A stretch of DNA of 64,000 nt from Diadema antillarum (taxonomy: Eukaryota), in the NCBI RefSeq assembly GCF_040938485.1, contig NW_027271384.1:1736001-1800000 (forward strand), written 5' to 3'. Below, piece after piece: positions 7,180-22,538 of this stretch. Under the pieces are notes generated by a model, which saw only the letters and a program-made list of their open reading frames with translations, did not search any database and was not told where the DNA came from. The position numbers and the translations under genes were made by a program. Positions within the stretch are counted from its first letter, which is position 1. Every line of letters starts with the position of its first letter.

Positions 7180-7261
7180 ATGGTGCGTCTGAAGGAACTA
7201 GTATACTCGGCAACGTGCATTCTAGGATTCTTAATAAGTTCTTCGATTGCTGCAAGAAACG
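7180..7261 (+). CDS. SMPDL3B: SMPDL3-like acid sphingomyelinase-like phosphodiesterase, exon 1 (signal peptide)
   Basis: ATG 7180 encodes MVRLKELVYSATCILGFLISSSIAARN, a hydrophobic signal peptide. GT donor at 7262 is phase 1 and joins in frame to the exon at 16061. The SMPDL3A vs 3B assignment rests only on the C-terminal hydrophobic tail. Confidence 0.75.
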
Positions 7262-7354
7262 GTAACGACATTATTATTTCTGTAATTAATTCCCTCTGCG
7301 TGATGTTGTTGGCCAGTTATATCAAGGTCGTGTGTAATTATGTCATTGTGCTAT

Positions 7355-7413
<59 letters not shown>
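7355..7413. repeat. (TA)n microsatellite
   Basis: About 29 TA units with two CA interruptions. Confidence 0.95.
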
Positions 7414-7551
7414 GTTTCACTTTTTGATATAAATCAAATGCCATTGCAGAGGAAAGAGATCAAAATCGTGCTTAATATACTAGTAATAGAAGAATCAACA
7501 TAAAATTTGTACGGCTATTAGTAAGTTGTTTTAATAACCGCTTTAAAAGGA

Positions 7552-7810
7552 AGTTTACCACCGAGACGACGAGAAGTTCATCGCCTTTTCGACCCTTTCG
7601 GGTCCGAGAAGGCGAGATCCGAGATCTCGGCTTCTCAACTTATCGGGTCGGAGAAGGCAGTAAGGCGAGATAGTTATGAGATCTCGTCGTCTCGACCTTT
7701 TGGGTCCGAGAAGGCGAGTTGTGAGATTTCGTCTTGTCGTCTTTTCTTCTCCGGAGAATTTCAGGCAAGGTGATTCATATCTTCGTGTTGGTCGAGAAGG
7801 CAAGAGTTAT
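7552..7810. repeat. Degenerate repeat/MITE remnant built from GGTCCGAGAAGGCGAG and TCTCGTCGTC motifs
   Basis: The motif GGTC(C/G)GAGAAGGC recurs at about 7601, 7647, 7702 and 7791. Confidence 0.55.
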
Positions 7811-8547
7811 CTCGTCTGCACAGTGAGCGGCACAGAGCTTTCGTGACCATGGTGACTGATCAATAACAATATAATACATGCATCATGAGTAAAAATAGGT
7901 GGCAGCAGCGGCGAGCTGTGTCCCTAGGAGACAAAGCATTCATCCTCTTTGCCTAAGTTCTGAGGATGACGAGGCTCAAAGGACACTATAACAACAACAA
8001 GGAAATAAACATTTTTTTGTTGTAGTTAAAACAAAACGAAACAAAAACAAAGACATCAACAAATCGTTTTCATCAAGAGAATCACTGGAACTTGCAGAAA
8101 ACCGGACATGAGGAAATTAAAGCTTTTAAAAATCTAGCGACAAATCAGACTACAGCAATCAAATTTGCGACATTATGTCACTGTGTGAAGGATAATTTAC
8201 ACTTGGAGCCTTTTTATGCACCTTTATATCAAATCTATTGCTTGTCATTTTTTTTTTCAACCCAAGATTGTAGAAATGTATTGCTTTTCAATTTTTATGA
8301 TAGGTAAAAAATACATAAAGTGTTGCTCGTGATGAATTTGATGTGAAAAATAAATCTTTTTTTTTTTTGGGGGGGGGGGTTAGTTTGATCATGGACTTCC
8401 ATGGTTTGATGTGAGGACTAGGATTAGGGATAAGGGGTATGGTTATGCGTGTGGGTATGTTTTATGTTTGGCTTGGCGTGCAGATATTTCATGGGAGCAA
8501 TTGTCACCGGAGCAAATTTTGTGGAACGTGCTCCTACAATCTTATTT

Positions 8548-8819
8548 TAATGGGTTTTAACGGACTGCAAGGAAGTTAAAACAATTTACTCTTGAAGGAC
8601 ACAGTAGCGATGTTGCCGGGCAGATATAGGGCAGGGGGGATTACGCAACAGGTGACCCCTGCTCTTGCTGCCCCTCTCGTTTGCGGGGGTAAGCGCACGC
8701 GGTGAAGAAATTGCTTAGGTAGCGTCATTCGATGGTGGTTTGTCGTGGAAGCAGGAAGTAATTGAGGCGGCTCCTAATATTGGATTTCGTGCATTGTCTT
8801 ACACATTGAACTTCGAAAC
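8548..8819 (+). repeat. Split direct repeat A1 (272 bp)
   Basis: Identical by eye to 14679-14950 (TAATGGGTTTT...CTTCGAAAC). Confidence 0.97.
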
Positions 8820-9028
8820 TTTGTAGTTTTCTATCATCTTCGTGCTACTTTCCCTCCCTTGGAACTTTTTTGGGTATACCTTCTTGCCTTTGAAATATTG
8901 GATATCATACGTGAACTTACATCGTCGATTCTGGGGCACTGTCTTTGCATTTTCGCATTGGGACGTTTGGGCCTAAGTTAATATCATCTTAGTTCTGCAT
9001 ATCACAACGCCGGTTCTGGACTTTCACT

Positions 9029-10090
9029 ATGCCGAAGTCGCGGAGTAAGATCATGAAGAAGGTGATGGGGAAGGAGCCGCCAGCGCCGCCCTCGTCGACG
9101 CGTCGTCGTGGTCGAAAGACAACCAAGAGTGGGGAGGAGGACCCGGCAGCTGGTCAAGGCGGATCGCCTGCAGCATCCGGTGAGTATAGTGTGTCTGCGT
9201 GTGGGCATGGTGACGCCTCTTGGCCCACCGTGGTCGACGCGGTGGTGCGTGAGCACCACGTGGCAAGCAAATCGGTAGATCTTAGTCCGGTTGGTCAGTT
9301 GATTGACCCACCTGACACTTTTGATGCCCTTCCCCAAGCCTTGTCGTGCGTAGGGGATGAGCTGGGGAGCGTCGTCCCCATGTCGGTTAAAGAGAAAATT
9401 TGGAAGGGGGAGTTTCTTGATTTGGGCATCCTCCTCAAATCCGACGTAGGTTCCCTGAGTGAGGAGGCGTCATTCAGCCTCGTGCAGGCTGGAGGATCTC
9501 TGCAAGTCAGGAGCGCGAGTCGCACCCCGCAAATTGCAAATATTGATATGTGGACGTCGGCCTTTCTGACATACGCTTCGGTGTATGTAGAAAAGCATGG
9601 AAATCGAGCGCGCGAGTTGTTCAAATATATGGACACAGTTCGATCAATCGTGCGCTTCGGAGGCTATAATTGGCGCACCTACGACGTGCAATTCAGGCTG
9701 CGGCAAGCGCGACAGCCGCTCCGTTCGTGGGCGACTATTGACACGGAGCTGTGGCTAACCGTAGCCACAGCCCAGCCCAGAGCAGCGTTTCGTTCGTATA
9801 CTCCGTTGCAGCCCTTTCGGGCGGGAGCTGGGTCAGGAGCCGCCACGTCATACCTGCGAGGTCGTCGCGGGGGGCCTTCCTCACCCCCGAGAGATAGGAG
9901 AGCGGGGGCAGATTTTGCACGCGGACGAGCCAATCACTGCTTCGCATTCAACGCGGGCTCTTGCAAGCGGGCGATCTGCAGATTCGCACATGTCTGCGCA
10001 AATTGCGGCTCCTCTACCCACACAGCTCAAGCCTGCACGCGGGGCGCTGTCAATGGCACCCAAAAAGACTCTCGGCCCATCCCCAATTAA
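9029..10090 (+). CDS. Ngaro ORF1, Gag-like protein (353 aa)
   Basis: Basic N-terminus, then KIWKGEFLDL and WTSAF...YDVQFR...SWATID..LW blocks, and a C-terminal Cys/His cluster CFAFNAGSCKRAICRFAHVCANCGSSTHTAQAC typical of YR-retroelement gag. Confidence 0.88.
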   Translation: MPKSRSKIMKKVMGKEPPAPPSSTRRRGRKTTKSGEEDPAAGQGGSPAASGEYSVSACGHGDASWPTVVDAVVREHHVASKSVDLSPVGQLIDPPDTFDALPQALSCVGDELGSVVPMSVKEKIWKGEFLDLGILLKSDVGSLSEEASFSLVQAGGSLQVRSASRTPQIANIDMWTSAFLTYASVYVEKHGNRARELFKYMDTVRSIVRFGGYNWRTYDVQFRLRQARQPLRSWATIDTELWLTVATAQPRAAFRSYTPLQPFRAGAGSGAATSYLRGRRGGPSSPPRDRRAGADFARGRANHCFAFNAGSCKRAICRFAHVCANCGSSTHTAQACTRGAVNGTQKDSRPIPN

Positions 10091-11654
10091 CATTGAGCGC
10101 GTGATCCCCTTTCTGCGCAATTATCCGGATAAGACAGCTGCAGTTAACATTATTGAGGGCTTTCGTTTTGGTTTCCGTTTGGGTTATACGGGGGAGCGGG
10201 TCGCTCACGAGTCACGGAACCTGGTCTCAGCGACAGCACACGCGCAAGTTCTACATCGTAAATTGTTCAAAGAGGTTAGCCTGGGGAGAATAGTCGGTCC
10301 ATATGTCTCACCTCCTTTTCCAAGATTTCGCTGCTCCCCAGTTGGGGTGGTGCCAAAGAAGGTGCCAGGGGAATTTCGCATGATCCAACACCTGTCAGCC
10401 CCTCGCGGTGCATCCGTAAATGATTGCATTGACCCGCGCGATTGTCAGGTCAGGTATTCTACTTTCGATGACGCCGTTGACCTCGTAATGCGTTTGGGGC
10501 AGGGGGCAGTCATGGGAAAAGCGGACATACAGTCTGCCTTTCGTCTTATCCCCGTGCATCCTGATGATTTTGAGCTACTGGGCATGCGCATAGATGGTCT
10601 ATATTATTACGATCGTTGTCTTCCGATGGGCTGCTCGGCGTCGTGCGCGATTTTCGAGCGTTTCAGTACCTTTCTTGAGTATTGTTGTAGAAATATCGCT
10701 GAGTCGGATGGCGTATTGCATTATTTGGACGATTTTTTCTTCGCAGCTAGCTCTCGACGTGAATGCGCCAGTCTAATGCGTTCTTTCCTTGCAATGTGTG
10801 AGCGGTTTGGGGTGCCAGTGGCTAATGACAAGACTACGGGTCCTGTCACCGTTATCGAGTATTTGGGGCTCACAATCGACTCTGTTTCGCTTACTGTACA
10901 GGTCCCAGCAGAGAAGGTGGTGGCTTTGCGCGCTGATCTAGAGGAAGCCACCTGTTGCCAAAAGCTTACACTCCGGCGTTTGCAGTCGCTAATAGGCAAG
11001 CTTAATTTCGTCTGTCGCGCGGTCGCACCTGGGCGAGCGTTCTTGCGGAGACTAATTGACCTTACAATTGGGATAAAGCAACCATTTCATAAGGTTAGAC
11101 TGACCCGCGGCGCCCGAGAGGATTTGCGTGCGTGGCTCACCTTCTTAATGCAGTTCAATGGCACCGTGATTAGATCGGCAAGCGAATGGACTTCGAATAG
11201 CGCGTTCAGTTTTTATACAGACGCTTCGGGTAGCATTGGGTTTGGCATCTACTTCGATGGGGAGTGGGCGCAGGGCAGATGGCCCGCCGGGGTGCTGCGG
11301 GAAAAACATTCCATCGCATATTTGGAGTTTCTTCCCATTGTCATCGGAGTGCAAGTTTGGGGAAAGCGCATTGCTAATCAGAAGGTGCTGTTTTGCTCAG
11401 ATAATCAGACGGTAGTGCATGTCATAAACAAGCAGAGCTCTAAATGCCCACGCATTATGGCCCTGGTCAGAATTTTCGTAGTGTGCTGCCTCGAGCGCAA
11501 CATTTGGTTCAGAGCACGTTACGTCCCCGGTTGCCGTAATGACATAGCTGATTCTTTGTCTCGTTTTCAGATGGAGAGATTCCGTTTGTTGGCACCACAA
11601 GCAGATCCCCACGAGACCCCCCTGCCACGCCAGCTGTGGGAGAGCTTGTGCTAG
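9915..11654 (+). CDS. Ngaro ORF2, reverse transcriptase plus RNase H
   Basis: RT motifs KADIQSAFRLIP, LPMG and YLDDFF. RNase H motifs FYTDAS, LE, SDN and DIADSLSR. The frame is open from 9765 with in-frame ATGs at 9990 and 10053; the true start is uncertain. Confidence 0.95.
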   Translation: MHADEPITASHSTRALASGRSADSHMSAQIAAPLPTQLKPARGALSMAPKKTLGPSPINIERVIPFLRNYPDKTAAVNIIEGFRFGFRLGYTGERVAHESRNLVSATAHAQVLHRKLFKEVSLGRIVGPYVSPPFPRFRCSPVGVVPKKVPGEFRMIQHLSAPRGASVNDCIDPRDCQVRYSTFDDAVDLVMRLGQGAVMGKADIQSAFRLIPVHPDDFELLGMRIDGLYYYDRCLPMGCSASCAIFERFSTFLEYCCRNIAESDGVLHYLDDFFFAASSRRECASLMRSFLAMCERFGVPVANDKTTGPVTVIEYLGLTIDSVSLTVQVPAEKVVALRADLEEATCCQKLTLRRLQSLIGKLNFVCRAVAPGRAFLRRLIDLTIGIKQPFHKVRLTRGAREDLRAWLTFLMQFNGTVIRSASEWTSNSAFSFYTDASGSIGFGIYFDGEWAQGRWPAGVLREKHSIAYLEFLPIVIGVQVWGKRIANQKVLFCSDNQTVVHVINKQSSKCPRIMALVRIFVVCCLERNIWFRARYVPGCRNDIADSLSRFQMERFRLLAPQADPHETPLPRQLWESLC

Positions 11655-12553
11655 AACGAGAGAGACTCCTATCCCAATCCCGGGCTGCTAGCACGCACAG
11701 CACGTATACACAGGCATGGGAATCTTTTCAATCTTTTCGATCGGCTTATCATTTCAGCCTCAGCGCTAACCCCACGCTCGAGCAGATTGTGCAATTTATA
11801 GCCTACCTGTCCCTTAACGGTTACGCAGCTGCCACGTTGGCCACCTATATCGCGGGGCTCTCCTTTCATTTGCAGTCACGCGGGCTACGTGACGTCACAC
11901 AGTGCTTTATCGTTAGGCGCATGCTGGACGGCAGCAAACGTGGTCGCATCTCCAGGGACGTGCGCTGCCCGATCACCTTACCCATATTAAGCCGCATGCT
12001 TGTGGCTCTCCCACACGTGTGCGCTTCGTCATTCGACGCGTTGCTGTTTCGAACTGCTTTCCTAGTAGCTTTCTTTGCGTTTCTCCGGGTTGGGGAATTT
12101 ACCGTCCGCGCCCGAAACCACACCCCCACTCTCAGATTGATTGACGTTCGCCTGCACAGCGGCAAGGCAGCTTTGGAGCTACACCTCCGTTCTTCCAAGA
12201 CTGACCAGGGGGGTGCTGGTTGTTATATAATCTTGCCTAGCAACGAATCCAAGAGCTTATGTCCAGTAGCAGCCGCTAGTGCCTACGTGGCTGTGCGTCC
12301 ACGTGGTAGCGAAGCTTTCTTCGTGCGTTATGACGGGGCCCCCCTAGTTAGGAAGGATTTCAATAACATATTAAAGCGCTGCGTGGAGTTCGTACGCCTC
12401 CCAGTCGCACTATTTTCTTCTCATTCGTTCCGTATTGGAGCGGCCACGTCAGCTGCCACGGCAGGCATTCCGGATGCAAGGATTAAAGGCATGGGCCGGT
12501 GGTCGTCTAATACATTTAGACGCTACATCCGAATTGATAAGATTTTCTCATAA
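11571..12553 (+). CDS. Ngaro ORF3, tyrosine recombinase (no upstream ATG; probably entered by splicing at 11571)
   Basis: Catalytic residues R (FLRVGE), K (SSKTDQ), HxxR (HSFRIGAAT), W (GRWSS) and Y (RRYIR) are all present. The frame is open from 11552 and the first in-frame ATG is only at 11921. Confidence 0.93.
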
Positions 12554-13085
12554 TAGCGCACATTATTGTGGCGCTTATTGAGCGTTTCGGGGTTTACAAC
12601 CCAAGTAAAGGTTTGGTTTGAAAGCGAAAATAAGTTTTTATCAATCTTTTGAAAGCCAAATGTTCTTCACTCTTAGCTTTAATTATATGTTTCAAGTTGT
12701 GGTAAGGGCTACCCAATCGTTATTATCGTATACTGAGAGTTGTAAACTGAGAGTTATCAATATGCCAGTGCATTACAGTTGCATTACAGTTGCCGAACGC
12801 TGTCTTACATTAGTCGAAGTACAGATAGGGCAACAAAGTTTGTTTTCATGCCAAAGGTAGCACCCTCCCCCCCCCCCCCCCCCATTTCCATTTCGGATAC
12901 CGCGCTTCTCGTCTCTTTTTCTCTCTTTCTCTCTTATCACAATACAGGCGTAAGAGTGATCGCAGACGGGGATTCAGGGGAGCGACGAAGCGGGCTCGGG
13001 CTGTCCTGCTGGGACTCGCTCTTCGGACATGCATAGTAATAAGGTCATTAGCATCTCCACCTTCGCGTTGCTGCCTGGTCGGCTC

Positions 13086-13172
13086 CGTTTACACAGGAGG
13101 TCAGAATCATCGACTTTTATAGTGTGCGTTTACACAGGAGGTCAGAATCATCGACTTTTATAGTGTGCGTTT
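13086..13172 (+). repeat. 41-bp perfect tandem duplication inside the element's 3' region
   Basis: CGTTTACACAGGAGGTCAGAATCATCGACTTTTATAGTGTG twice, plus CGTTT. Confidence 0.95.
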
Positions 13173-13976
13173 CAACCCGGGGCAACTTTATCCTATCATT
13201 CCTTGGTAGTCGCTGTCAGGCAACCATGATATCATCCCACTACCGATCTTGAACTGCCTGGTCTTTGTGTTATACATTGTTCCGAATGGATTAAAGCACG
13301 ATACATACGAACTAACAAACAGACAAGCCAAAAAAAAAATAAATAAATAAAGCAATATTCTCGCGTCATTATAATGTCAGCCATGGGCTGGAGCACAGGT
13401 GTATTTAGCGGCAGGGAGCAATATTCTTAAATGGACCCAAACAGGCCATGGCATTGACTTTCGACAGAAGCCGGTTCCCCGCAGGATTGTAGGTTCTGCT
13501 TCCTCTTTTCCGCGTTATTCGGGTTTACATACTTGACTGTTTTACATTGTATCATACATTCCCTTGTTTGGGCCCTTCAAGACACAGTTTAATATTGTGG
13601 CCAACCGTTCTCATATAATAATGTTAACTCTATTGGCATGGATTAGAACTAAACACGTAGATAAATGAATACATTAGTAAGTAAATAAATTAGAAATATA
13701 ATACAAACTCGTAAAGTAGCGGCCCGTCAGTGTTGTGCCATCTGGATTATTGTTCGGCCGTGTAAATTCATGTTTCACTATTATAGGTTGTATATATGTT
13801 ATATGCTAGTCTGGGGGTAGCGGGCATGCTCTAGTAGGGTCTGGATTGGTTGCGTATGAATTTAGGGGATTATAAAGGAGCTGCTCCGTTGAGCTCCTTG
13901 GATGATTGGAGATAATGATGTCCGTACTTCTCGGTGACTCTGTTATCCTATGGCGGCGGACCCTGGGGGTCCGTTT

Positions 13977-14682
13977 GGCCGTATTTTGAAAAAATTAAGC
14001 CGCTATAGGATAACATCTGCTTTAAAGTACAGTTTGAATCGTTCATAATTATATTCCTCTCGAGGTAAAGGGGGCTTTGTTCTGGTAACATACTTTTGGA
14101 TGCAATTCTATTTACCGGCGAGTAGCGAAGCAGGCTGACCTTAGTACCACGAGGATGGATTGTTATCTAAGCCCTCCGTAAATATGCGAGTCTTGGGGCA
14201 GTCGCGCTGGTCGGTGACTGCTTCAAGGCGCGGACGCAAGGGATCGGAGTTGGTATATGTGCCCTCGTGAAGCACTTGTTAATGCGACCAGAACAGGTGT
14301 TTGGGTTTTATTTCCTGCCAATTTCGCTATCGGTGCGGCGGGGCAGATGGACTTTTACGGGTGGCTTTGCTTTCGCTTGATATACCAGTTGAGTAACATT
14401 GGTTTACTATATGAATTAAGGGCCCTTGTCACAGAGGCTATAAACCCCCTTCATCTCGGGATGCATAATGCTGTGAAGTGTATTACTATTGTACGTGTTT
14501 GGAATGGTGTAAGAAGTTCTCACTATATCAAAATGTATATGCAAGATCGAACTCGTTATTATGGATAAGCACGTTGTCATTCGATTGTATGGATTATATA
14601 ACTTATGGCTTCCACGATTAAACCACCATAACCGCAGATTTGGTCTTCCATGTCTTTTTATTGTGTCGTACCAAGGAGTAAT
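13977..14682 (+). repeat. Split direct repeat B1 (706 bp)
   Basis: Matches 15321-16026 with one visible substitution (G14098 vs T15442). Confidence 0.97.
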
Positions 14683-14950
14683 GGGTTTTAACGGACTGCA
14701 AGGAAGTTAAAACAATTTACTCTTGAAGGACACAGTAGCGATGTTGCCGGGCAGATATAGGGCAGGGGGGATTACGCAACAGGTGACCCCTGCTCTTGCT
14801 GCCCCTCTCGTTTGCGGGGGTAAGCGCACGCGGTGAAGAAATTGCTTAGGTAGCGTCATTCGATGGTGGTTTGTCGTGGAAGCAGGAAGTAATTGAGGCG
14901 GCTCCTAATATTGGATTTCGTGCATTGTCTTACACATTGAACTTCGAAAC
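14679..14950 (+). repeat. Split direct repeat A2, overlapping B1 by TAAT
   Basis: Copy of A1. The B1/A2 junction reads ...CCAAGGAG-TAAT-GGGTTTT... Confidence 0.97.
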
Positions 14951-15320
14951 CCACCTCCTCCCCGTCCGCCTCCTGCAAATCTTGGATTGGTATTTCATTT
15001 CTAATGGGTGTTTCGATAATTGATAACAAAGTACATAGGGGGCAAGCTTACCTACGTATTTCCATACGGTCGTCGTAATGGACGTTTCGGTTTGATGGAA
15101 ACGGATGTGCCGATTAATGATAACATGTCAGGGAGGCATGGGTTGTAAGGTAACAGTGGGATAGTGTGGCCATTCTCAAGAGCGTAGCTTGGTTGCACCG
15201 CGCAGGTGGACCGCAGGGGAATTTTCCGGCGACATTTTCCCTTCATAATAAGGGTGGTTGAGAAAGCTGAAGGGTTTTTTGCTGGTTTTTCGCCCCTGCT
15301 TGGGGGTTGCCACACTTTGC

Positions 15321-16026
15321 GGCCGTATTTTGAAAAAATTAAGCCGCTATAGGATAACATCTGCTTTAAAGTACAGTTTGAATCGTTCATAATTATATTC
15401 CTCTCGAGGTAAAGGGGGCTTTGTTCTGGTAACATACTTTTTGATGCAATTCTATTTACCGGCGAGTAGCGAAGCAGGCTGACCTTAGTACCACGAGGAT
15501 GGATTGTTATCTAAGCCCTCCGTAAATATGCGAGTCTTGGGGCAGTCGCGCTGGTCGGTGACTGCTTCAAGGCGCGGACGCAAGGGATCGGAGTTGGTAT
15601 ATGTGCCCTCGTGAAGCACTTGTTAATGCGACCAGAACAGGTGTTTGGGTTTTATTTCCTGCCAATTTCGCTATCGGTGCGGCGGGGCAGATGGACTTTT
15701 ACGGGTGGCTTTGCTTTCGCTTGATATACCAGTTGAGTAACATTGGTTTACTATATGAATTAAGGGCCCTTGTCACAGAGGCTATAAACCCCCTTCATCT
15801 CGGGATGCATAATGCTGTGAAGTGTATTACTATTGTACGTGTTTGGAATGGTGTAAGAAGTTCTCACTATATCAAAATGTATATGCAAGATCGAACTCGT
15901 TATTATGGATAAGCACGTTGTCATTCGATTGTATGGATTATATAACTTATGGCTTCCACGATTAAACCACCATAACCGCAGATTTGGTCTTCCATGTCTT
16001 TTTATTGTGTCGTACCAAGGAGTAAT
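15321..16026 (+). repeat. Split direct repeat B2 (element 3' end)
   Basis: Copy of B1 ending ...CCAAGGAGTAAT, after which host intron sequence resumes. Confidence 0.97.
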
Positions 16027-16060
16027 ATAATGTTATTTCCCCTTTTTACCCATAATCAAG

Positions 16061-16271
16061 AGGGCAAATTCTTCCATATCTCTGACATCCACTACGACCC
16101 GCAATATGGACAAGGAGTTTATCCGCAAGCTTCCTCGTGCGCGGTGCAGGTTGACGTGGCGGAATTCCCCCTCGGAAATTACGACTGCGACTCCCCTTGG
16201 TCCCTGGTCGAAGCGACTCTAAAGACAATGGCTGACTCCGAGAGTGCCGCGGACTTCATAGTTTGGACAGG
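16061..16271 (+). CDS. SMPDL3B: SMPDL3-like exon 2
   Basis: AG acceptor at 16059-60. EGKFFHISDIHYDP...GNYDCDSPWSLV...DFIVWTG contains the DxH metal motif. GT donor at 16272 (phase 2). Confidence 0.92.
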
Positions 16272-16915
16272 GTACGTACAAACTGCTGGCCTTTTCAATT
16301 CACTTTCTATTCTTCTTCCGACATGTCCGTCCGAGGTAGGGGTAAAACATAGAGAGAGAGAGATTGATTGGAAGTTTAGGTCTCTACCTTTTCGAGGAAA
16401 ATGATATTGGTCAGCTGAAGCAAAACAGCTTTTCTGCACTTTTAGATTATCTATTAGTCCATTCGACTAATATCTATTAGTCGAATGGACCACTAGACCG
16501 CCCCCAATAAATCTCCTGCTGCTTCTCGTCTCGTATCATGTGTTGATCTTTGGCCTTGTTTTAATCCATCCTCGTATTGCATTTATAAAAAATCAAGAAA
16601 ATAAACGTTCTTTGGAAAGAATTTGTAATTTGTAATCAATGCACCAAGCGATTGGATTCCACCACGATGTGCTGCCATGGCATTAAGATGATTATATAAT
16701 GAAATAGTCGACCTCGCATAAGTCGAAGGTCTTTTCAAGACCTTTATTCTCTTTATATTTTATTGAATTTAATCCCTCATAAGTCGAATTTTCTCTAAGT
16801 CAAAATAGATTCAGCCAATGCAAGAATGACTGATTGCTCAGCGCGATGCGCAAAGCGATTACAATCTTAGAACCCGTTTCTTTCAATAATTATATATTTT
16901 CCTGTCAATCTGCAG

Positions 16916-17163
16916 CGACACACCTGGGGCGTTGGCACAAGACCTCTTGCCCAACACCACAGTCCTCGAAATCATCCAGAACGCCTCCAGGGCCATCGAA
17001 GACCGCTTTCCGAACCTCCCAGTCTTTCCCGCCATCGGTAACCATGACAACTGGCCGCGGCATCTTCTGGAGCCCCAGCCAAATGCTTTCCGGGATGCCC
17101 TGGGCCAGGTGTGGGCCTCGTGGTTGGCGGACTACTCCGGCGCGTTGGACACATTCAGCCAAG
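16916..17163 (+). CDS. SMPDL3B: SMPDL3-like exon 3
   Basis: TGCAG acceptor. Completes WTGD and contains PVFPAIGNHD. GT donor at 17164 (phase 1). Confidence 0.93.
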
Positions 17164-17604
17164 GTAGGCGATTATCATCTTTACTATGTCTTACCATTAT
17201 CGTTATCATCATCATCATAACATTATCCTAGAATAATGTAATAACCTTCAAAGAGAAATCTACGCAGAGAGAATTTCCTCAATCTTCGTTTATTTTGCAC
17301 GCATTCTTTTTGCTATTGGCCCCTCATTAGCCAGGTATCACCAGCGAAATGTATATAATTTTAGTACACGATAGTTATTCGTCTCCGCAAGTGAAGGCTT
17401 TTGGGCGCTCATATAATTTACGGTAAGTGCATTTCAATATGTTTAGTCTCGAGGTTCTAAGCACAGTGCGTAAACATCATCGTATGCAAGATTGAATGTG
17501 ATGTGTATGCCTATCTTTTGTGTTTAATTTTAGAGTGTATGCACGTGTGCCATCATTTTACGTTTTGCCCTTTCACAATACCAATATCAATTGCCTATAC
17601 GCAG

Positions 17605-17768
17605 GGGGATATTACGTGACTGCAATTAACGCCAACTTGTCTGTCATCTCGCTGAACACTGCATTCTACTACTACAAGGACACGCGCGTCGAAGGACTCG
17701 ACGACCCGGCGGGACAATTCGTGTGGCTGGAAGAGAAGCTAGAAGACGCGGAGAATGATGGCGTGGTG
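17605..17768 (+). CDS. SMPDL3B: SMPDL3-like exon 4
   Basis: GGYYVTAINANLSVISLNT...DPAGQFVWLEEKL. GCAG acceptor and GTATGT donor (phase 0). Confidence 0.92.
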
Positions 17769-18178
17769 GTATGTCCTCCATAACCAACTGCCGAACAAAC
17801 ATGTTCTTAGGCATTGTATGATATATTTTATATAAGAGAGAGAGAGGGGGGGGGGGGGCTGAGAATAGGATTTTTTTTTTTGATACACAAAAATGCTATA
17901 AAATCTTGAGTACAAGGCCTAAATATTTAAGCTTTGATGTACCGGAAATTAAAGCATGACATGAATCGGTATATCATTAAAACAAATCCATTCATTCATT
18001 CATTTTCATTCATTTAAGCCTGATTGCATCGTATATCAAAATAGATGATTTTTCCTCTCAACACACAGCGTGTTTACACTTTTGAAAAGATCGTGAGGTA
18101 TATGTATAACTATTAGAAAATCCTTAACCCTATAATTACTCGATACATGTATATAATAAAAAGTAAAATTCCGAACTC

Positions 18179-18582
18179 TCTCACTGGAGGAACCAGCCGC
18201 GACTGAGAAGACAAAAAAAAAAAGACAAAAAGACAAACAAAAAATAGCTTGCACTCTCAACAACAAGGCGACTCCGAGACGTCTTCTCTGACTCCGCGAC
18301 GTCTCCATTGGTCCTCGCAAGGTCGTGGAGACGTCGTGGAGACGTCTCCTGGACCAGCTGGAGACTGAAAAAAAAAAGGTCAAAAAAAAAAAAGTATCGA
18401 ACGTGTTTGATTTCCTCGCGACTCCCCTGAGACCATAGCCGGCTCGTCTCAAGGAGGCGTCACAGGCGACGTTGTGGAGACGTCGCGTCGCGGAGACGTC
18501 TCGGCGACCAGAGAGATTTGAGTGTCCACTACGCATGCTAGGTGGCCACAATATATTGGCTATGGTCTCTAAGCCAGTGAGA
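18179..18582. mobile_element. Probable MITE with repeated GAGACGTC motifs
   Basis: Short TIR TCTCACTGG / CCAGTGAGA and about 7 internal G(A/C)GACGT(C/T) motifs in both orientations. Confidence 0.45.
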
Positions 18583-18640
18583 TACCCCCTTTAGTGTCTT
18601 GAATATCAAACTACATGGATTTGTCCTCTCTGCATGCAAG

Positions 18641-18818
18641 GTCTACATCGTTGCACATATCCTACCGGGCTCCTTGGAAGGGGAAACGCTGAAGTCGTTC
18701 CAGCCCAGATTCAACGAGAGATACCTCGACATACTTAGACGCTTCAGTCACGTGATCAAGGGACAGTTCTACGGCCATCACCACTACGATAGCTTCCGGG
18801 TTCTGTATGCTGAGGACG
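18641..18818 (+). CDS. SMPDL3B: SMPDL3-like exon 5
   Basis: VYIVAHILPG...GQFYGHHHYDSFRV supplies the remaining His ligands (H and GHxH). Donor at 18819 (phase 1). Confidence 0.93.
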
Positions 18819-20102
18819 GTAGGTGATGGATGAGAGTAACCATTGTTGTGATGCTTCTCAAACAGATTTGCTGTTGATGCAAGTTTATAAGTCTGCGTTC
18901 GTTTCATGCAGTTGCCATGATTATGATTTTATGCCACAGAGTTGGAGGTGAGAGGGGTCAATGTTACCATGGGAGTTAGTTCCATGATCTTACTATCAAT
19001 CACGTTTTATGATAAGAGGCCCGGGTAATACTAGCATGTCATGAAACTTAAAATACCATAAAATAAAAAAAAAAACTTGAATGCAAATGATTATTCTTCT
19101 CTTGAGCCATCATGTTGCCCTTCAGTGATTGCAGTACATTCATCCCATAACTTACTACTGACTACTGACTTGACTGATTGGAGTTACGTTTTCCGGCATG
19201 GTAACATGTAAATGTAATTATGATATAATCAGATACCGTCAGGAAGCATACGGCTATGTAAAATGCGTAATGTATATCCTGCCATTAAGAACACACATAC
19301 AAGCACATGCACTCACACTCATTCACCCATAGATATTATAATACATTAATGCACTAATACGCACAAGTTCACACACAGCAAAATTAACTCCATCATTGTA
19401 TTACGAGGAAAGCTCGTGATGAACACTCTAATGACTGAGTTGGTTTGTTTTTTCTCCCAAGAACCTTGAAATGAAGCCGCACTTTTTCGTACTTATTGAC
19501 AAACCATATTCATGGCACCGGACTCCTTGTTGACGTGCAGGGAACATTTTAACCTGATCGCTATTCTGCGCAAAGTTATAAGTAGGCTACTTTTTTTTTT
19601 TTTTGAATGATGGCAAACTTTACTTTCAGAAATAAACAAATTCGGGTTTTGTTGATTTCCCAAACTATGATACGAAACAACTACACATCGCAAAAAAGGA
19701 TTATTCTGTCCTATTCCATAAACTACAATAACGTTTTTGCCTTCGAAAATAGTTCTGTCCTCATTTGTATCATGGGTTGATAATCTCAATAGTCTTTCAG
19801 TTACTTCAAACACGTCAGACCAGCGATTAAAAATCAGCAATGTAACAATAAAAGTGTGGGGGGGGGGGGGTGGGTGAAGATGAAAATGACAGTCATGACA
19901 AGACAAATTGAACTTTTGGGCGCTTTATTTAGGTTGCCCTCATCGCTGGATTTCAAAAACCCTAACAATGCTGTAAATCAAAGTAGACGATCCTTTGATA
20001 ACCATTCATGTGCCTATCAGTGGAGAGGAAGAACAGACAACCAAAATGACATTTGTCACGAATTATGACCTTTTTTTTTCTTTTTTTCTTTTTTCCAAAC
20101 AG

Positions 20103-20590
20103 GCACTCCGGTTAATGCGTTGTATGTACAGCCATCTTTGACGCCGCGAAACGCCACTGCTCTGGGTCCGAGAAATCCGAGTTTCCGTGTTGTTAGCTAC
20201 GATCGCGCCACCGGCGACGTACTCGATATCGAACAGTACTACCTCGACCTCGCGAACAGCCAACTGACGTGGGAGCTCGAATATCGCGCCACCACCTCGT
20301 ACGGCGTAAGCGATCTCAGTCCCGCCTCCCTCGACGCACTCATCGAGAAATTCTCCGAAGGCGAAGCGGCGTCTAACGAAATCTTTCGCCGTTACCATGG
20401 CCACAGCACCGCACTGGCGGACGTGAAAGAGTGCGATGATGATTGCAGACGATATCACTTTTGCGCCATCACCAACCTCGACTACGACAAATACGACGAT
20501 TGCCTCAGTGGACATGCTGTGAGGAAAGGCGGACAGATCGGCAGCCTTGGAGCTACAATCTTTGTTCTTCTCTATAACTTGCTTTCTTGA
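20103..20590 (+). CDS. SMPDL3B: SMPDL3-like exon 6 (last), with hydrophobic C-terminal tail
   Basis: Long pyrimidine tract and AG at 20101-02. PSLTP..NPSFRVVSYD...YYLDL, Cys pair CDDDCRRYHFCAI, TGA at 20588. The total CDS of 1371 nt is divisible by 3. Confidence 0.92.
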
Positions 20591-22269: not shown

Positions 22270-22538
22270 NNNNNNNNNNNNNNNNNNNNNNNNNNNNNNN
22301 NNNNNNNNNNNNNNNNNNNNNNNNNNNNNNNNNNNNNNNNNNNNNNNNNNNNNNNNNNNNNNNNNNNNNNNNNNNNNNNNNNNNNNNNNNNNNNNNNNNN
22401 NNGCNNNNNNNNNNNNNNNNNNNNNNNNNNNNNNNNNNNNNNNNNNNNNNNNNNNNNNNNNNNNNNNNNNNNNNNNNNNNNNNNNNNNNNNNNNNNNNNN
22501 NNNNNNNNNNNNNNNNNNNNNNNNNNNNNNNNNNNNNN
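22270..22538. other. Assembly gap (N run) with an isolated GC at 22403-22404
   Basis: Directly visible. Confidence 0.99.

What the first reader, a model, noticed from the sequence alone, without database searches (positions are those of the whole stretch)
7180..16271. Element and host share splice phase 1, predicting in-frame chimeric proteins in both directions
Seen: host intron 1 (7262-16060) is phase 1, and so are the element's donor (9180) and YR acceptor (11570). Host exon 1 spliced to 11571 gives signal peptide plus YR (82+983 nt, 354 aa). The element's gag exon spliced to host exon 2 gives Gag(1-50) plus the entire phosphodiesterase without its signal peptide (151+1289 nt, 479 aa), driven from the element's own promoter in A1. 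Inference: one sense insertion could put the recombinase under the host promoter, or create a mislocalised (cytosolic or nuclear) SMPDL3-like enzyme.
Basis: inference. Interest (0 to 1): 0.72.

Follow-up and report, generated by a model that had tools for sequence, protein, structure and literature searches.

The report
Intronic retrotransposon whose splice phase matches host
A young, intact mobile element sits in the first intron of a sea urchin enzyme gene; its splice sites could in principle join in frame with the host's, but that match is a one-in-three coincidence and no fused transcript or protein was found.

Summary
Every coordinate and length in the finding checks out. The window is Diadema antillarum (GCA_040938485.1). 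The host gene is the annotated 456-aa SMPDL3B-like phosphodiesterase. Its exon 1 (7180-7261) encodes only the signal peptide, and intron 1 (7262-16060) is phase 1.

Inside the intron, in sense orientation, lies an intact 7.5-kb Ngaro-like tyrosine-recombinase (YR) retrotransposon (8552-16026). NCBI models in D. antillarum, two Lytechinus species and an oyster all join a Gag leader to the recombinase at the same place and in the same phase.

So both cross-splices would be in frame (354 aa and 479 aa). This is a single coincidence, not two. Three of the five host introns are phase 1, and phase 1 is typical after signal peptides.

No chimeric protein is in the databases, and no RNA evidence could be reached. 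The predicted products look non-functional: one is a recombinase sent to the ER, the other a secreted enzyme stranded in the cytosol.

New here: the second haplotype in the same assembly lacks the element, so the sequenced animal is heterozygous. The likelier effect on the host is a weakened filled allele. The conserved spliced recombinase message is the more interesting by-product.

The parts
7180..7261 (+). Host exon 1 of the SMPDL3B-like gene: start codon plus signal peptide (27 codons + 1 base). Donor GTAACG at 7262.
   Evidence: Identical to the N-terminus of NCBI protein P0272. Identical in the empty allele.
7262..16060 (+). Host intron 1, phase 1. It is 8799 nt here and 1308 nt in the empty allele.
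   Evidence: The S. purpuratus ortholog has a phase-1 intron at the same position.
8539..8551 (+). 13 nt of AT-rich left flank ending in TAAT. Absent from the empty allele. TAAT is the probable crossover core.
   Evidence: TAAT lies left of A1 in three independent copies.
8552..16026 (+). Intact Ngaro-like tyrosine-recombinase retrotransposon (7475 nt) in sense orientation.
8552..8819 (+). Split direct repeat A1 (268 nt), 100% identical to A2 at 14683-14950.
9029..9179 (+). Gag leader exon (50 codons + 1 base). Very basic, includes RRRGRK. Followed by donor G|GTGAGT at 9180.
   Evidence: This is the only GTGAGT in the 3.5-kb coding region.
9029..10090 (+). ORF1 (gag-like), 353 aa. It reads straight through the donor.
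   Evidence: Annotated as a gene in the assembly. No Pfam match.
9180..11570 (+). Element intron: 2391 nt (a multiple of 3), phase 1, GT...AG.
   Evidence: NCBI model P0001 on copy L001. Conserved in Lytechinus and an oyster.
9915..11654 (+). ORF2 (pol): reverse transcriptase plus a thumb/RNase H-like tail. It is in the +1 frame relative to gag.
   Evidence: Pfam RVT_1 at E 7e-15. Weak RVT_thumb and RT_RNaseH matches.
11571..12553 (+). Recombinase (YR) exon (983 nt including the stop). Its frame opens only at 11552, and it has no ATG before about residue 118.
   Evidence: Catalytic R, K, HxxR, W and Y are all present. Pfam Phage_integrase at E 2.9e-5, below the curated cut-off.
13338..13351 (+). 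Three overlapping AATAAA hexamers downstream of YR: a candidate early poly(A) site.
13977..14682 (+). Split direct repeat B1 (706 nt), 99.9% identical to B2. Contains ATTAAA at 14617.
14683..14950 (+). Split direct repeat A2.
14951..15320 (+). 370-nt spacer between A2 and B2. This is a non-textbook arrangement.
15321..16026 (+). Split direct repeat B2, the element's 3' end. Contains ATTAAA at 15961.
16027..16060 (+). The 34 nt of host intron left between the element and the exon 2 acceptor. Only the last 26 nt are shared with the empty allele.
16061..16271 (+). Host exon 2, which starts at the first residues of the mature catalytic domain.
   Evidence: Aligns to residue 3 onward of SMPDL3B structures 9k2e and 5kar, E 1.4e-11.
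16916..20590 (+). Host exons 3-6: 16916-17163, 17605-17768, 18641-18818 and 20103-20590. Ends with ASMase_C and a hydrophobic tail.

Best explanation
A recently inserted, apparently functional Ngaro-like retrotransposon lies in sense orientation in intron 1 of the Diadema antillarum SMPDL3B-like gene. Its 3' end is 34 nt upstream of the exon 2 acceptor. The insertion is on one of the two haplotypes of the sequenced animal.

The element carries its own conserved phase-1 intron. Splicing joins the first 50 codons of gag (start codon plus a basic leader) to the recombinase ORF, which has no start codon of its own. This would give a subgenomic recombinase mRNA, as avian retroviruses do for env.

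Host intron 1 is an ordinary, ancient phase-1 intron after a signal peptide. Cross-splicing in either direction would therefore be in frame. That is a coincidence with roughly 1-in-3 odds, not a designed feature.

If cross-splicing occurs, the likeliest consequence is reduced output from the filled allele. The routes would be trapping of host exon 1 on the strong element acceptor with polyadenylation inside the element, or a disturbed 3' splice region. A useful chimeric protein is less likely.

Shown: the anatomy, the phases, the heterozygosity, and the conservation of the element's splice sites. Inferred: actual splicing, promoter use, and the fate of any chimeras.
For: Identity of window and host:
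- The window is 100% identical to GCA_040938485.1 contig JBFRCO010000496.1.
- NCBI protein P0272 equals the six-exon host model.
- Exon 2 begins at the mature N-terminus of SMPDL3B structures. ASMase_C is in the last exon.

The element:
- RVT_1.
- YR catalytic residues are invariant across relatives.
- A1/A2 are 272/272 identical and B1/B2 are 705/706 identical.
- All three ORFs are intact.
- Two more copies at over 98.7% identity, each flanked by TAAT.

The element's intron:
- P0001 (377 aa, D. antillarum) is exactly Gag(1-50) + D + YR.
- Models in L. pictus, L. variegatus and the oyster Saccostrea share the phase-1 structure and the identical acceptor TCTCGTTTTCAG.
- The donor CG|GTGAGT is the only GTGAGT in each urchin element. 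It lies at nt 152-170 of gag in a stretch that otherwise does not align.
- The YR frame opens 19 nt before the acceptor in all four elements.
- No X_XXY_YYZ slippery site lies in the pol/YR overlap in any of them.

The empty allele:
- L005 is on a second contig, flanks are 98% identical, intron 1 is 1308 nt, and it encodes the same protein.
- The assembly is an uncollapsed diploid with 2.52% heterozygosity (PMC13511894).

Phase statistics:
- Host phases are 1, 2, 1, 0, 1.
- The S. purpuratus intron 1 is phase 1.
- PMC1626468.
Against: - No RNA data could be examined. Neither the element's own splice nor any chimeric splice is demonstrated.
- The four spliced models come from gene-prediction pipelines. 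A predictor could favour a GT...AG that supplies an ATG to an ORF without a start.
- Acceptor conservation partly reflects the pol coding constraint (codons S-R-F-Q).
- The 'empty' allele is not a clean pre-integration site: 'GC' replaces 22 nt of flank.
- The element's splice sites match the consensus better than the host's. The donor is 8/9 versus 6/9, and the acceptor is CAG with a longer pyrimidine tract versus AAG. Appreciable cross-splicing therefore cannot be excluded.
Confidence: 0.8

Rival explanations
1. One reading: cross-splicing really happens and matters. The host promoter drives a signal-peptide-recombinase fusion, and/or the element's promoter drives a cytosolic or nuclear Gag-leader-SMPDL3B enzyme. 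Either would have biological effect or be raw material for domestication.
For: - Both junctions are in frame and free of stops.
- The element's splice sites are strong and conserved.
- The host donor (GTAACG) and acceptor (AAG) are weaker.
- The element's end is only 34 nt from the host acceptor.
- Capture of transposase exons through splice sites is a documented route to new genes (10.1101/2020.05.07.082677).
Against: - No 354-aa or 479-aa chimera is among the near-identical hits for either partner.
- NCBI annotates the normal 456-aa product on both alleles.
- A signal peptide would send the recombinase to the ER, away from DNA, and it would lack the basic leader (inference).
- The enzyme fusion lacks its signal peptide and needs read-through of poly(A) hexamers at 13338-13351, 14617 and 15961.
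- Once the element's own donor and acceptor pair, the acceptor is no longer available to the host donor (inference).
Confidence: 0.12
2. The element's 'intron' is a gene-prediction artefact. The recombinase is made as a Pol-YR fusion by ribosomal frameshifting or another recoding event in the 103-nt pol/YR overlap. In that case 11570 is not a real acceptor and the chimera argument collapses.
For: - The literature on DIRS/Ngaro elements describes overlapping ORFs and does not mention splicing.
- YR is in the -1 frame relative to pol, with a 103-nt overlap.
- The spliced models are computational.
Against: - There is no canonical slippery heptamer in the overlap of any of four elements.
- The donor CG|GTGAGT is positionally conserved in three urchin elements inside non-alignable sequence, and is unique within each 3.5-kb coding region.
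- The same phase and the identical 12-nt acceptor are found in an oyster.
- The intron length is a multiple of 3, and the Gag leaders are uniformly basic.
Confidence: 0.15
3. L004 and L005 are recent paralogous duplicates rather than alleles. The insertion would then be fixed in one gene copy, and 'carrier versus empty' individuals would not exist.
For: - The first assembly preprint argued for segmental duplication.
- The empty site differs by an extra 22-to-2 nt change.
Against: - The later paper shows the 1.75-Gb assembly retains both haplotypes: 84.4% duplicated BUSCOs, a haploid genome of about 0.7-0.9 Gb, and 2.52% heterozygosity.
- Flank divergence of 1.4-2.1% matches that heterozygosity.
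- The two loci encode identical proteins.
Confidence: 0.1

Closest known systems
Ngaro-like tyrosine-recombinase retrotransposons (order DIRS; Goodwin and Poulter 2004, as summarised in PMC4157794, PMC9210276 and PMC13465315)
   Same: - gag-like ORF, RT/RNase H ORF and YR ORF with overlapping frames.
- Split direct repeats: A1 at the 5' end and B1-A2-B2 at the 3' end.
- No target-site duplication.
- Relatives carry an SGNH/GDSL hydrolase ORF.
   Different: - A 370-nt spacer separates A2 from B2.
- This copy has no hydrolase ORF.
- The conserved phase-1 intron joining a Gag leader to YR is not mentioned in the open literature I could search.
Retroviral subgenomic env mRNA that borrows the gag start codon (avian leukosis/sarcoma viruses; from my own knowledge, not looked up here)
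   Same: - A donor lies a few dozen codons into gag and an acceptor lies just upstream of the downstream ORF.
- The result is an in-frame fusion that gives that ORF gag's AUG.
   Different: - The downstream product is a recombinase, not an envelope protein.
- The borrowed leader is 50-89 aa and basic.
- There is no RNA evidence yet.
Gene-trap-type alleles from sense-oriented intronic retroelements (for example mouse IAP/ETn insertions; from my own knowledge)
   Same: - A sense-oriented intronic insertion brings a strong acceptor and poly(A) signals.
- The predicted result is host exon 1 spliced into the element, with premature termination.
   Different: - No aberrant transcripts have been observed here.
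- The trapped ORF would be in frame, which is incidental to the loss-of-function effect.
Host-transposase fusion genes formed by splice-site capture (10.1101/2020.05.07.082677)
   Same: - A mobile element supplies a ready acceptor in front of its enzyme ORF.
- Upstream host exons can therefore be joined to it in frame.
   Different: - Those cases fuse host regulatory domains to DNA-binding transposase domains, and they are fixed and conserved.
- Here the host part is only a secretion signal, and the insertion is a young polymorphism.

Membership tests
Ngaro-like YR retrotransposon | Reverse transcriptase domain | tested here: met
   Pfam RVT_1, E 7e-15, 55.7 bits against a cut-off of 29.6.
Ngaro-like YR retrotransposon | RNase H following RT | tested here: inconclusive
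   Only weak matches: RVT_thumb at 0.02 and RT_RNaseH at 0.087. The oyster relative gives RVT_3 at 8.9e-4.
Ngaro-like YR retrotransposon | Tyrosine recombinase with catalytic R, K, HxxR, H/W and Y | tested here: met
   R172, K209, H284, R287, W310 and Y318 are invariant in an 8-sequence alignment. Pfam Phage_integrase scores 24.4 bits, just under the 27.1 cut-off.
Ngaro-like YR retrotransposon | Split direct repeats A1 ... B1-A2-B2 | tested here: met
   A1 equals A2 (100%) and B1 equals B2 (99.9%), with B1 abutting A2. One deviation: a 370-nt spacer between A2 and B2.
Ngaro-like YR retrotransposon | No methyltransferase-like domain (separates Ngaro from DIRS1/PAT) | tested here: inconclusive
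   ORF2 is 579 aa and YR follows directly, which leaves little room for such a domain. No profile for the DIRS MT domain was available to test its absence.
Ngaro-like YR retrotransposon | Integration without target-site duplication at a short core shared with the B|A junction | tested here: met
   TAAT precedes A1 in three independent copies, and B ends in TAAT. There are no flanking duplications.
SMPDL3B (host gene) | Calcineurin-like metallophosphoesterase domain plus ASMase C-terminal domain | tested here: met
   ASMase_C at E 3.5e-22 in the last exon. Precomputed PF00149 + PF19272 on P0272. The best solved-structure match is SMPDL3B.
SMPDL3B (host gene) | N-terminal signal peptide and C-terminal GPI-anchor signal | not tested
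   Inferred from the hydrophobic N-terminus in exon 1 and the hydrophobic C-terminal tail. No predictor was run.
TE-host chimeric transcript / exon trap | Sense orientation inside an intron with phase-compatible splice sites | tested here: met
TE-host chimeric transcript / exon trap | Chimeric junctions observed in RNA or protein | not testable with these tools
   No sea urchin RNA-seq is reachable. No chimeric protein is among the hits. The joined models were deliberately not searched.
Spliced subgenomic mRNA of a retroelement | Conserved donor and acceptor giving an in-frame leader-ORF fusion | tested here: met
   Four species in two phyla share the phase, the acceptor and the leader architecture.
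Spliced subgenomic mRNA of a retroelement | Spliced RNA species detected | not testable with these tools
   Only annotation models are available. The Logan contig L006 is unspliced.

The most novel reading that the evidence does not exclude
Ngaro-like retrotransposons of bilaterians (sea urchins and oysters at least) may express their tyrosine recombinase from a conserved spliced subgenomic mRNA. That mRNA would borrow Gag's start codon and a basic, NLS-like leader. This expression strategy is not described for the DIRS order in the literature I could search. One consequence is that every sense-oriented insertion into a phase-1 intron carries a ready-made, strong, in-frame exon trap. That is a plausible route both to hypomorphic host alleles and to recombinase capture. 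This heterozygous SMPDL3B insertion in the reference animal would be a natural test case.
Probability: 0.4. Interest if true: 0.55.

Novelty: new member of a known kind. Interest (0 to 1): 0.33.

Why it matters
As stated, the finding is an ordinary coincidence: a sense-oriented intronic transposon whose splice phase happens to match the host's.

Its practical value is that the reference individual is heterozygous and three synonymous exonic SNPs mark the alleles. The effect of a strong transposon donor and acceptor pair on a host gene can therefore be measured directly in one animal.

The by-product may interest transposon specialists. It is a deeply conserved Gag-leader-to-recombinase intron in Ngaro-like elements. 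It would explain how an ORF without a start codon is expressed, and it would add a retrovirus-like subgenomic strategy to tyrosine-recombinase retrotransposons.

Tried and rejected
- Pfam on gag, on host exons 1-5 and on small ORFs in the element's 3' region gave nothing.
- Literature searches for splicing in DIRS, PAT or Ngaro elements found only engineered introns, or no mention. The key subscription papers (Goodwin and Poulter 2001 and 2004; Poulter and Butler 2015) are not in the library, so 'undescribed' is provisional.
- I looked for transcript-derived contigs showing the splice. L006 (a Logan contig, 71% identical YR) is unspliced pol+YR. L007-L009 are RT-less contigs in which the long YR ORF extends into a pol remnant, not processed copies. 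The Mytilus model P0084 is not on record.
- The -1 frameshift alternative has no slippery heptamer to support it.
- The D. setosum ortholog, wanted as an outgroup for the empty site, is absent from the protein collection.
- I did not scan the viral, metagenome or prokaryote DNA collections for junction strings, because they do not hold sea urchin RNA.
- In one search I located the exon boundaries of three database proteins on their own loci. This used an in-memory two-piece comparison, and nothing joined was output or searched. The later mappings used tblastn instead.
- The N runs at 22270-22402 and 22405-22538 were left as they are. The corresponding stretch of the other haplotype was not read.
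- No contig looked human.

Full report
**What is in the sequence**

- A start codon at 7180 opens an 82-nt exon that ends at 7261 and is followed by GTAACG.
- The next host exon starts at 16061, after ...ATCAAG.
- Within the 8.8-kb intron, an ATG at 9029 opens a gag-like ORF.
- 151 nt into that ORF there is a perfect donor, G|GTGAGT, with GT at 9180.
- A good acceptor, TTTTCAG, ends at 11570.
- From 11571 the recombinase frame runs to TAA at 12551-12553, which is 983 nt.
- Piecewise translation shows no stops.
- The donors at 7262 and 9180, the element acceptor ending at 11570 and the host acceptor ending at 16060 are all phase 1.

**Host gene**

- Exon 2 aligns from its first residue to residue 3 of the mature SMPDL3B structures (9k2e and 5kar, E 1.4e-11). 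The last exon holds ASMase_C.
- I used one exon to reach a full-length urchin ortholog. With that I retrieved the annotated D. antillarum protein P0272, 'acid sphingomyelinase-like phosphodiesterase 3b', 456 aa.
- P0272 equals the six-exon model exactly: 7180-7261, 16061-16271, 16916-17163, 17605-17768, 18641-18818 and 20103-20590.
- Exon 1 encodes only the hydrophobic signal sequence. The intron phases are 1, 2, 1, 0, 1.
- The S. purpuratus ortholog has a phase-1 intron at the same position. The host phase is therefore ancient, and it is typical of introns at signal-peptide cleavage sites (PMC1626468).

**The element**

- It spans 8552-16026 and has the split-direct-repeat layout of Ngaro-like elements.
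  - A1 (8552-8819) equals A2 (14683-14950) at 100%.
  - B1 (13977-14682) equals B2 (15321-16026) with one mismatch.
  - B1 abuts A2.
- It encodes gag (353 aa), an RT-containing pol (RVT_1, E 7e-15) and a tyrosine recombinase with all catalytic residues.
- Two other copies in the genome are over 98.7% identical. All three have TAAT to the left of A1, and B ends in TAAT. This fits recombinase-mediated integration at a TAAT core without target duplication.
- The near-identical repeats and intact ORFs indicate a very recent insertion.

**Is the element's intron real?**

- The recombinase frame opens only 19 nt before the acceptor and has no ATG until about residue 118, so it needs a start from elsewhere.
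- The top database hit, P0001 (NCBI, D. antillarum, 377 aa), is exactly Gag(1-50) + D + recombinase. It comes from another copy of the element.
- RefSeq models in Lytechinus pictus and L. variegatus (about 50% identical recombinases), and one in the oyster Saccostrea cucullata, have the same two-exon, phase-1 structure.
  - They carry basic leaders of 51-89 aa.
  - Their acceptor, TCTCGTTTTCAG, is identical.
- In the three urchin elements, CG|GTGAGT is the only GTGAGT in the 3.5-kb coding region. It sits at nt 152-170 of gag, inside sequence that otherwise does not align.
- The alternative is a -1 frameshift from pol. No slippery heptamer lies in the 103-nt overlap in any of the four elements.
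- I therefore rate the splice as probably real (about 0.75), but it rests on conservation and on annotation models, not on RNA.
- Open-access literature on DIRS/Ngaro elements speaks only of overlapping ORFs.

**The chimeras**

- Because all the sites are phase 1, host exon 1 joined to the recombinase exon gives 27 + 1 + 326 = 354 aa.
- The gag leader joined to host exons 2-6 gives 479 aa.
- Both numbers are confirmed piecewise. I did not build or search the joined sequences.
- The coincidence is weak. The element's two sites share a phase by necessity, so there is one free condition. Three of the five host introns satisfy it.

Functional plausibility is low (inference).
- The first product would be a recombinase behind a signal peptide. 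It would be directed to the ER and would lack the basic leader that every native model carries.
- The second would be a normally secreted, probably GPI-anchored enzyme without its signal peptide.
- The second also requires transcription to pass three AATAAA hexamers at 13338-13351 and ATTAAA at 14617 and 15961.

No protein of either architecture appears among near-identical hits. NCBI annotates the normal product.

**What I think matters more for the host**

- The element's sites match the consensus better than the host's. The donor is GTGAGT versus GTAACG. The acceptor is a long pyrimidine tract plus CAG versus an interrupted tract plus AAG.
- The insertion leaves only 34 nt (26 of them original) in front of exon 2, which is the usual branch-point zone.
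- The expected outcome is the classical one for sense-oriented intronic retroelements: some trapping or mis-splicing and a weaker allele.

**Heterozygosity**

- P0272 is encoded on two contigs of the same assembly.
- L004 is the window itself, at 100% identity. L005 has 98%-identical flanks, the same six exons and a 1308-nt intron 1 without the element.
- The assembly is an uncollapsed diploid with 2.52% heterozygosity (PMC13511894). These are therefore almost certainly the two alleles of one animal.
- Three synonymous SNPs (16095, 17093, 20338) distinguish the alleles.

**An unexplained detail**

The empty allele has 'GC' where the filled allele has 13 + 8 nt of AT-rich flank around the element, including the TAAT core. 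This is either an independent indel polymorphism or an imprecise deletion of the element.

**Verdict**

- The locus is an ordinary young polymorphic transposon insertion.
- The conserved Gag-leader-to-recombinase intron is a modestly interesting side result.

Noticed in passing
window 9180-11570; L002 5170-7590; L003 5155-7539; L012 3269-5530: A conserved phase-1 intron joins a basic Gag leader to the recombinase in Ngaro-like elements of three sea urchins and an oyster. The 12-nt acceptor TCTCGTTTTCAG is identical in all four. The recombinase ORF has no start codon of its own.
   Followed up: yes
L005 4355-4372 versus window 8531-8551 and 16027-16042: The empty allele carries 'GC' in place of 22 nt of AT-rich flank (including the TAAT core) that surrounds the element on the filled allele. 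It is therefore not a clean pre-integration site.
   Followed up: partly
window 15994-16404 (+): An ATG inside repeat B2 reads in frame, without a stop, through the last 66 nt of the host intron into exon 2. An unspliced read-through transcript could also encode a signal-peptide-less enzyme.
   Followed up: no
window 14951-15320: A 370-nt spacer separates repeat A2 from B2, unlike the adjacent B1-A2-B2 usually drawn for Ngaro elements. It is also present in copies L001 and L010.
   Followed up: partly
window 13086-13167: A perfect 41-nt tandem duplication lies in the non-coding region between the recombinase stop and B1. No hydrolase ORF is present there, unlike in relatives (L007, L012).
   Followed up: no
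L001 8128 (equivalent to window 11157-11202): The copy on which NCBI modelled the spliced recombinase has a 46-nt deletion in pol. That copy is not autonomous, yet it could still supply recombinase.
   Followed up: no
L007, L008, L009 (metagenome and Logan contigs): Three independent 3-kb contigs carry a 193-aa ORF, a 375-aa recombinase and a GDSL/SGNH hydrolase, but no reverse transcriptase. This may be a deletion derivative of a mollusc-type Ngaro element.
   Followed up: partly
window 7347-7419 and 7594-7746: The host intron upstream of the element contains an (AT)n microsatellite and a diverged 51-nt direct repeat. Both lie in the stretch that aligns with the empty allele.
   Followed up: no
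window 22270-22402 and 22405-22538: Two N runs lie downstream of the host gene. They were left untouched, and the corresponding part of the other haplotype was not read.
   Followed up: no
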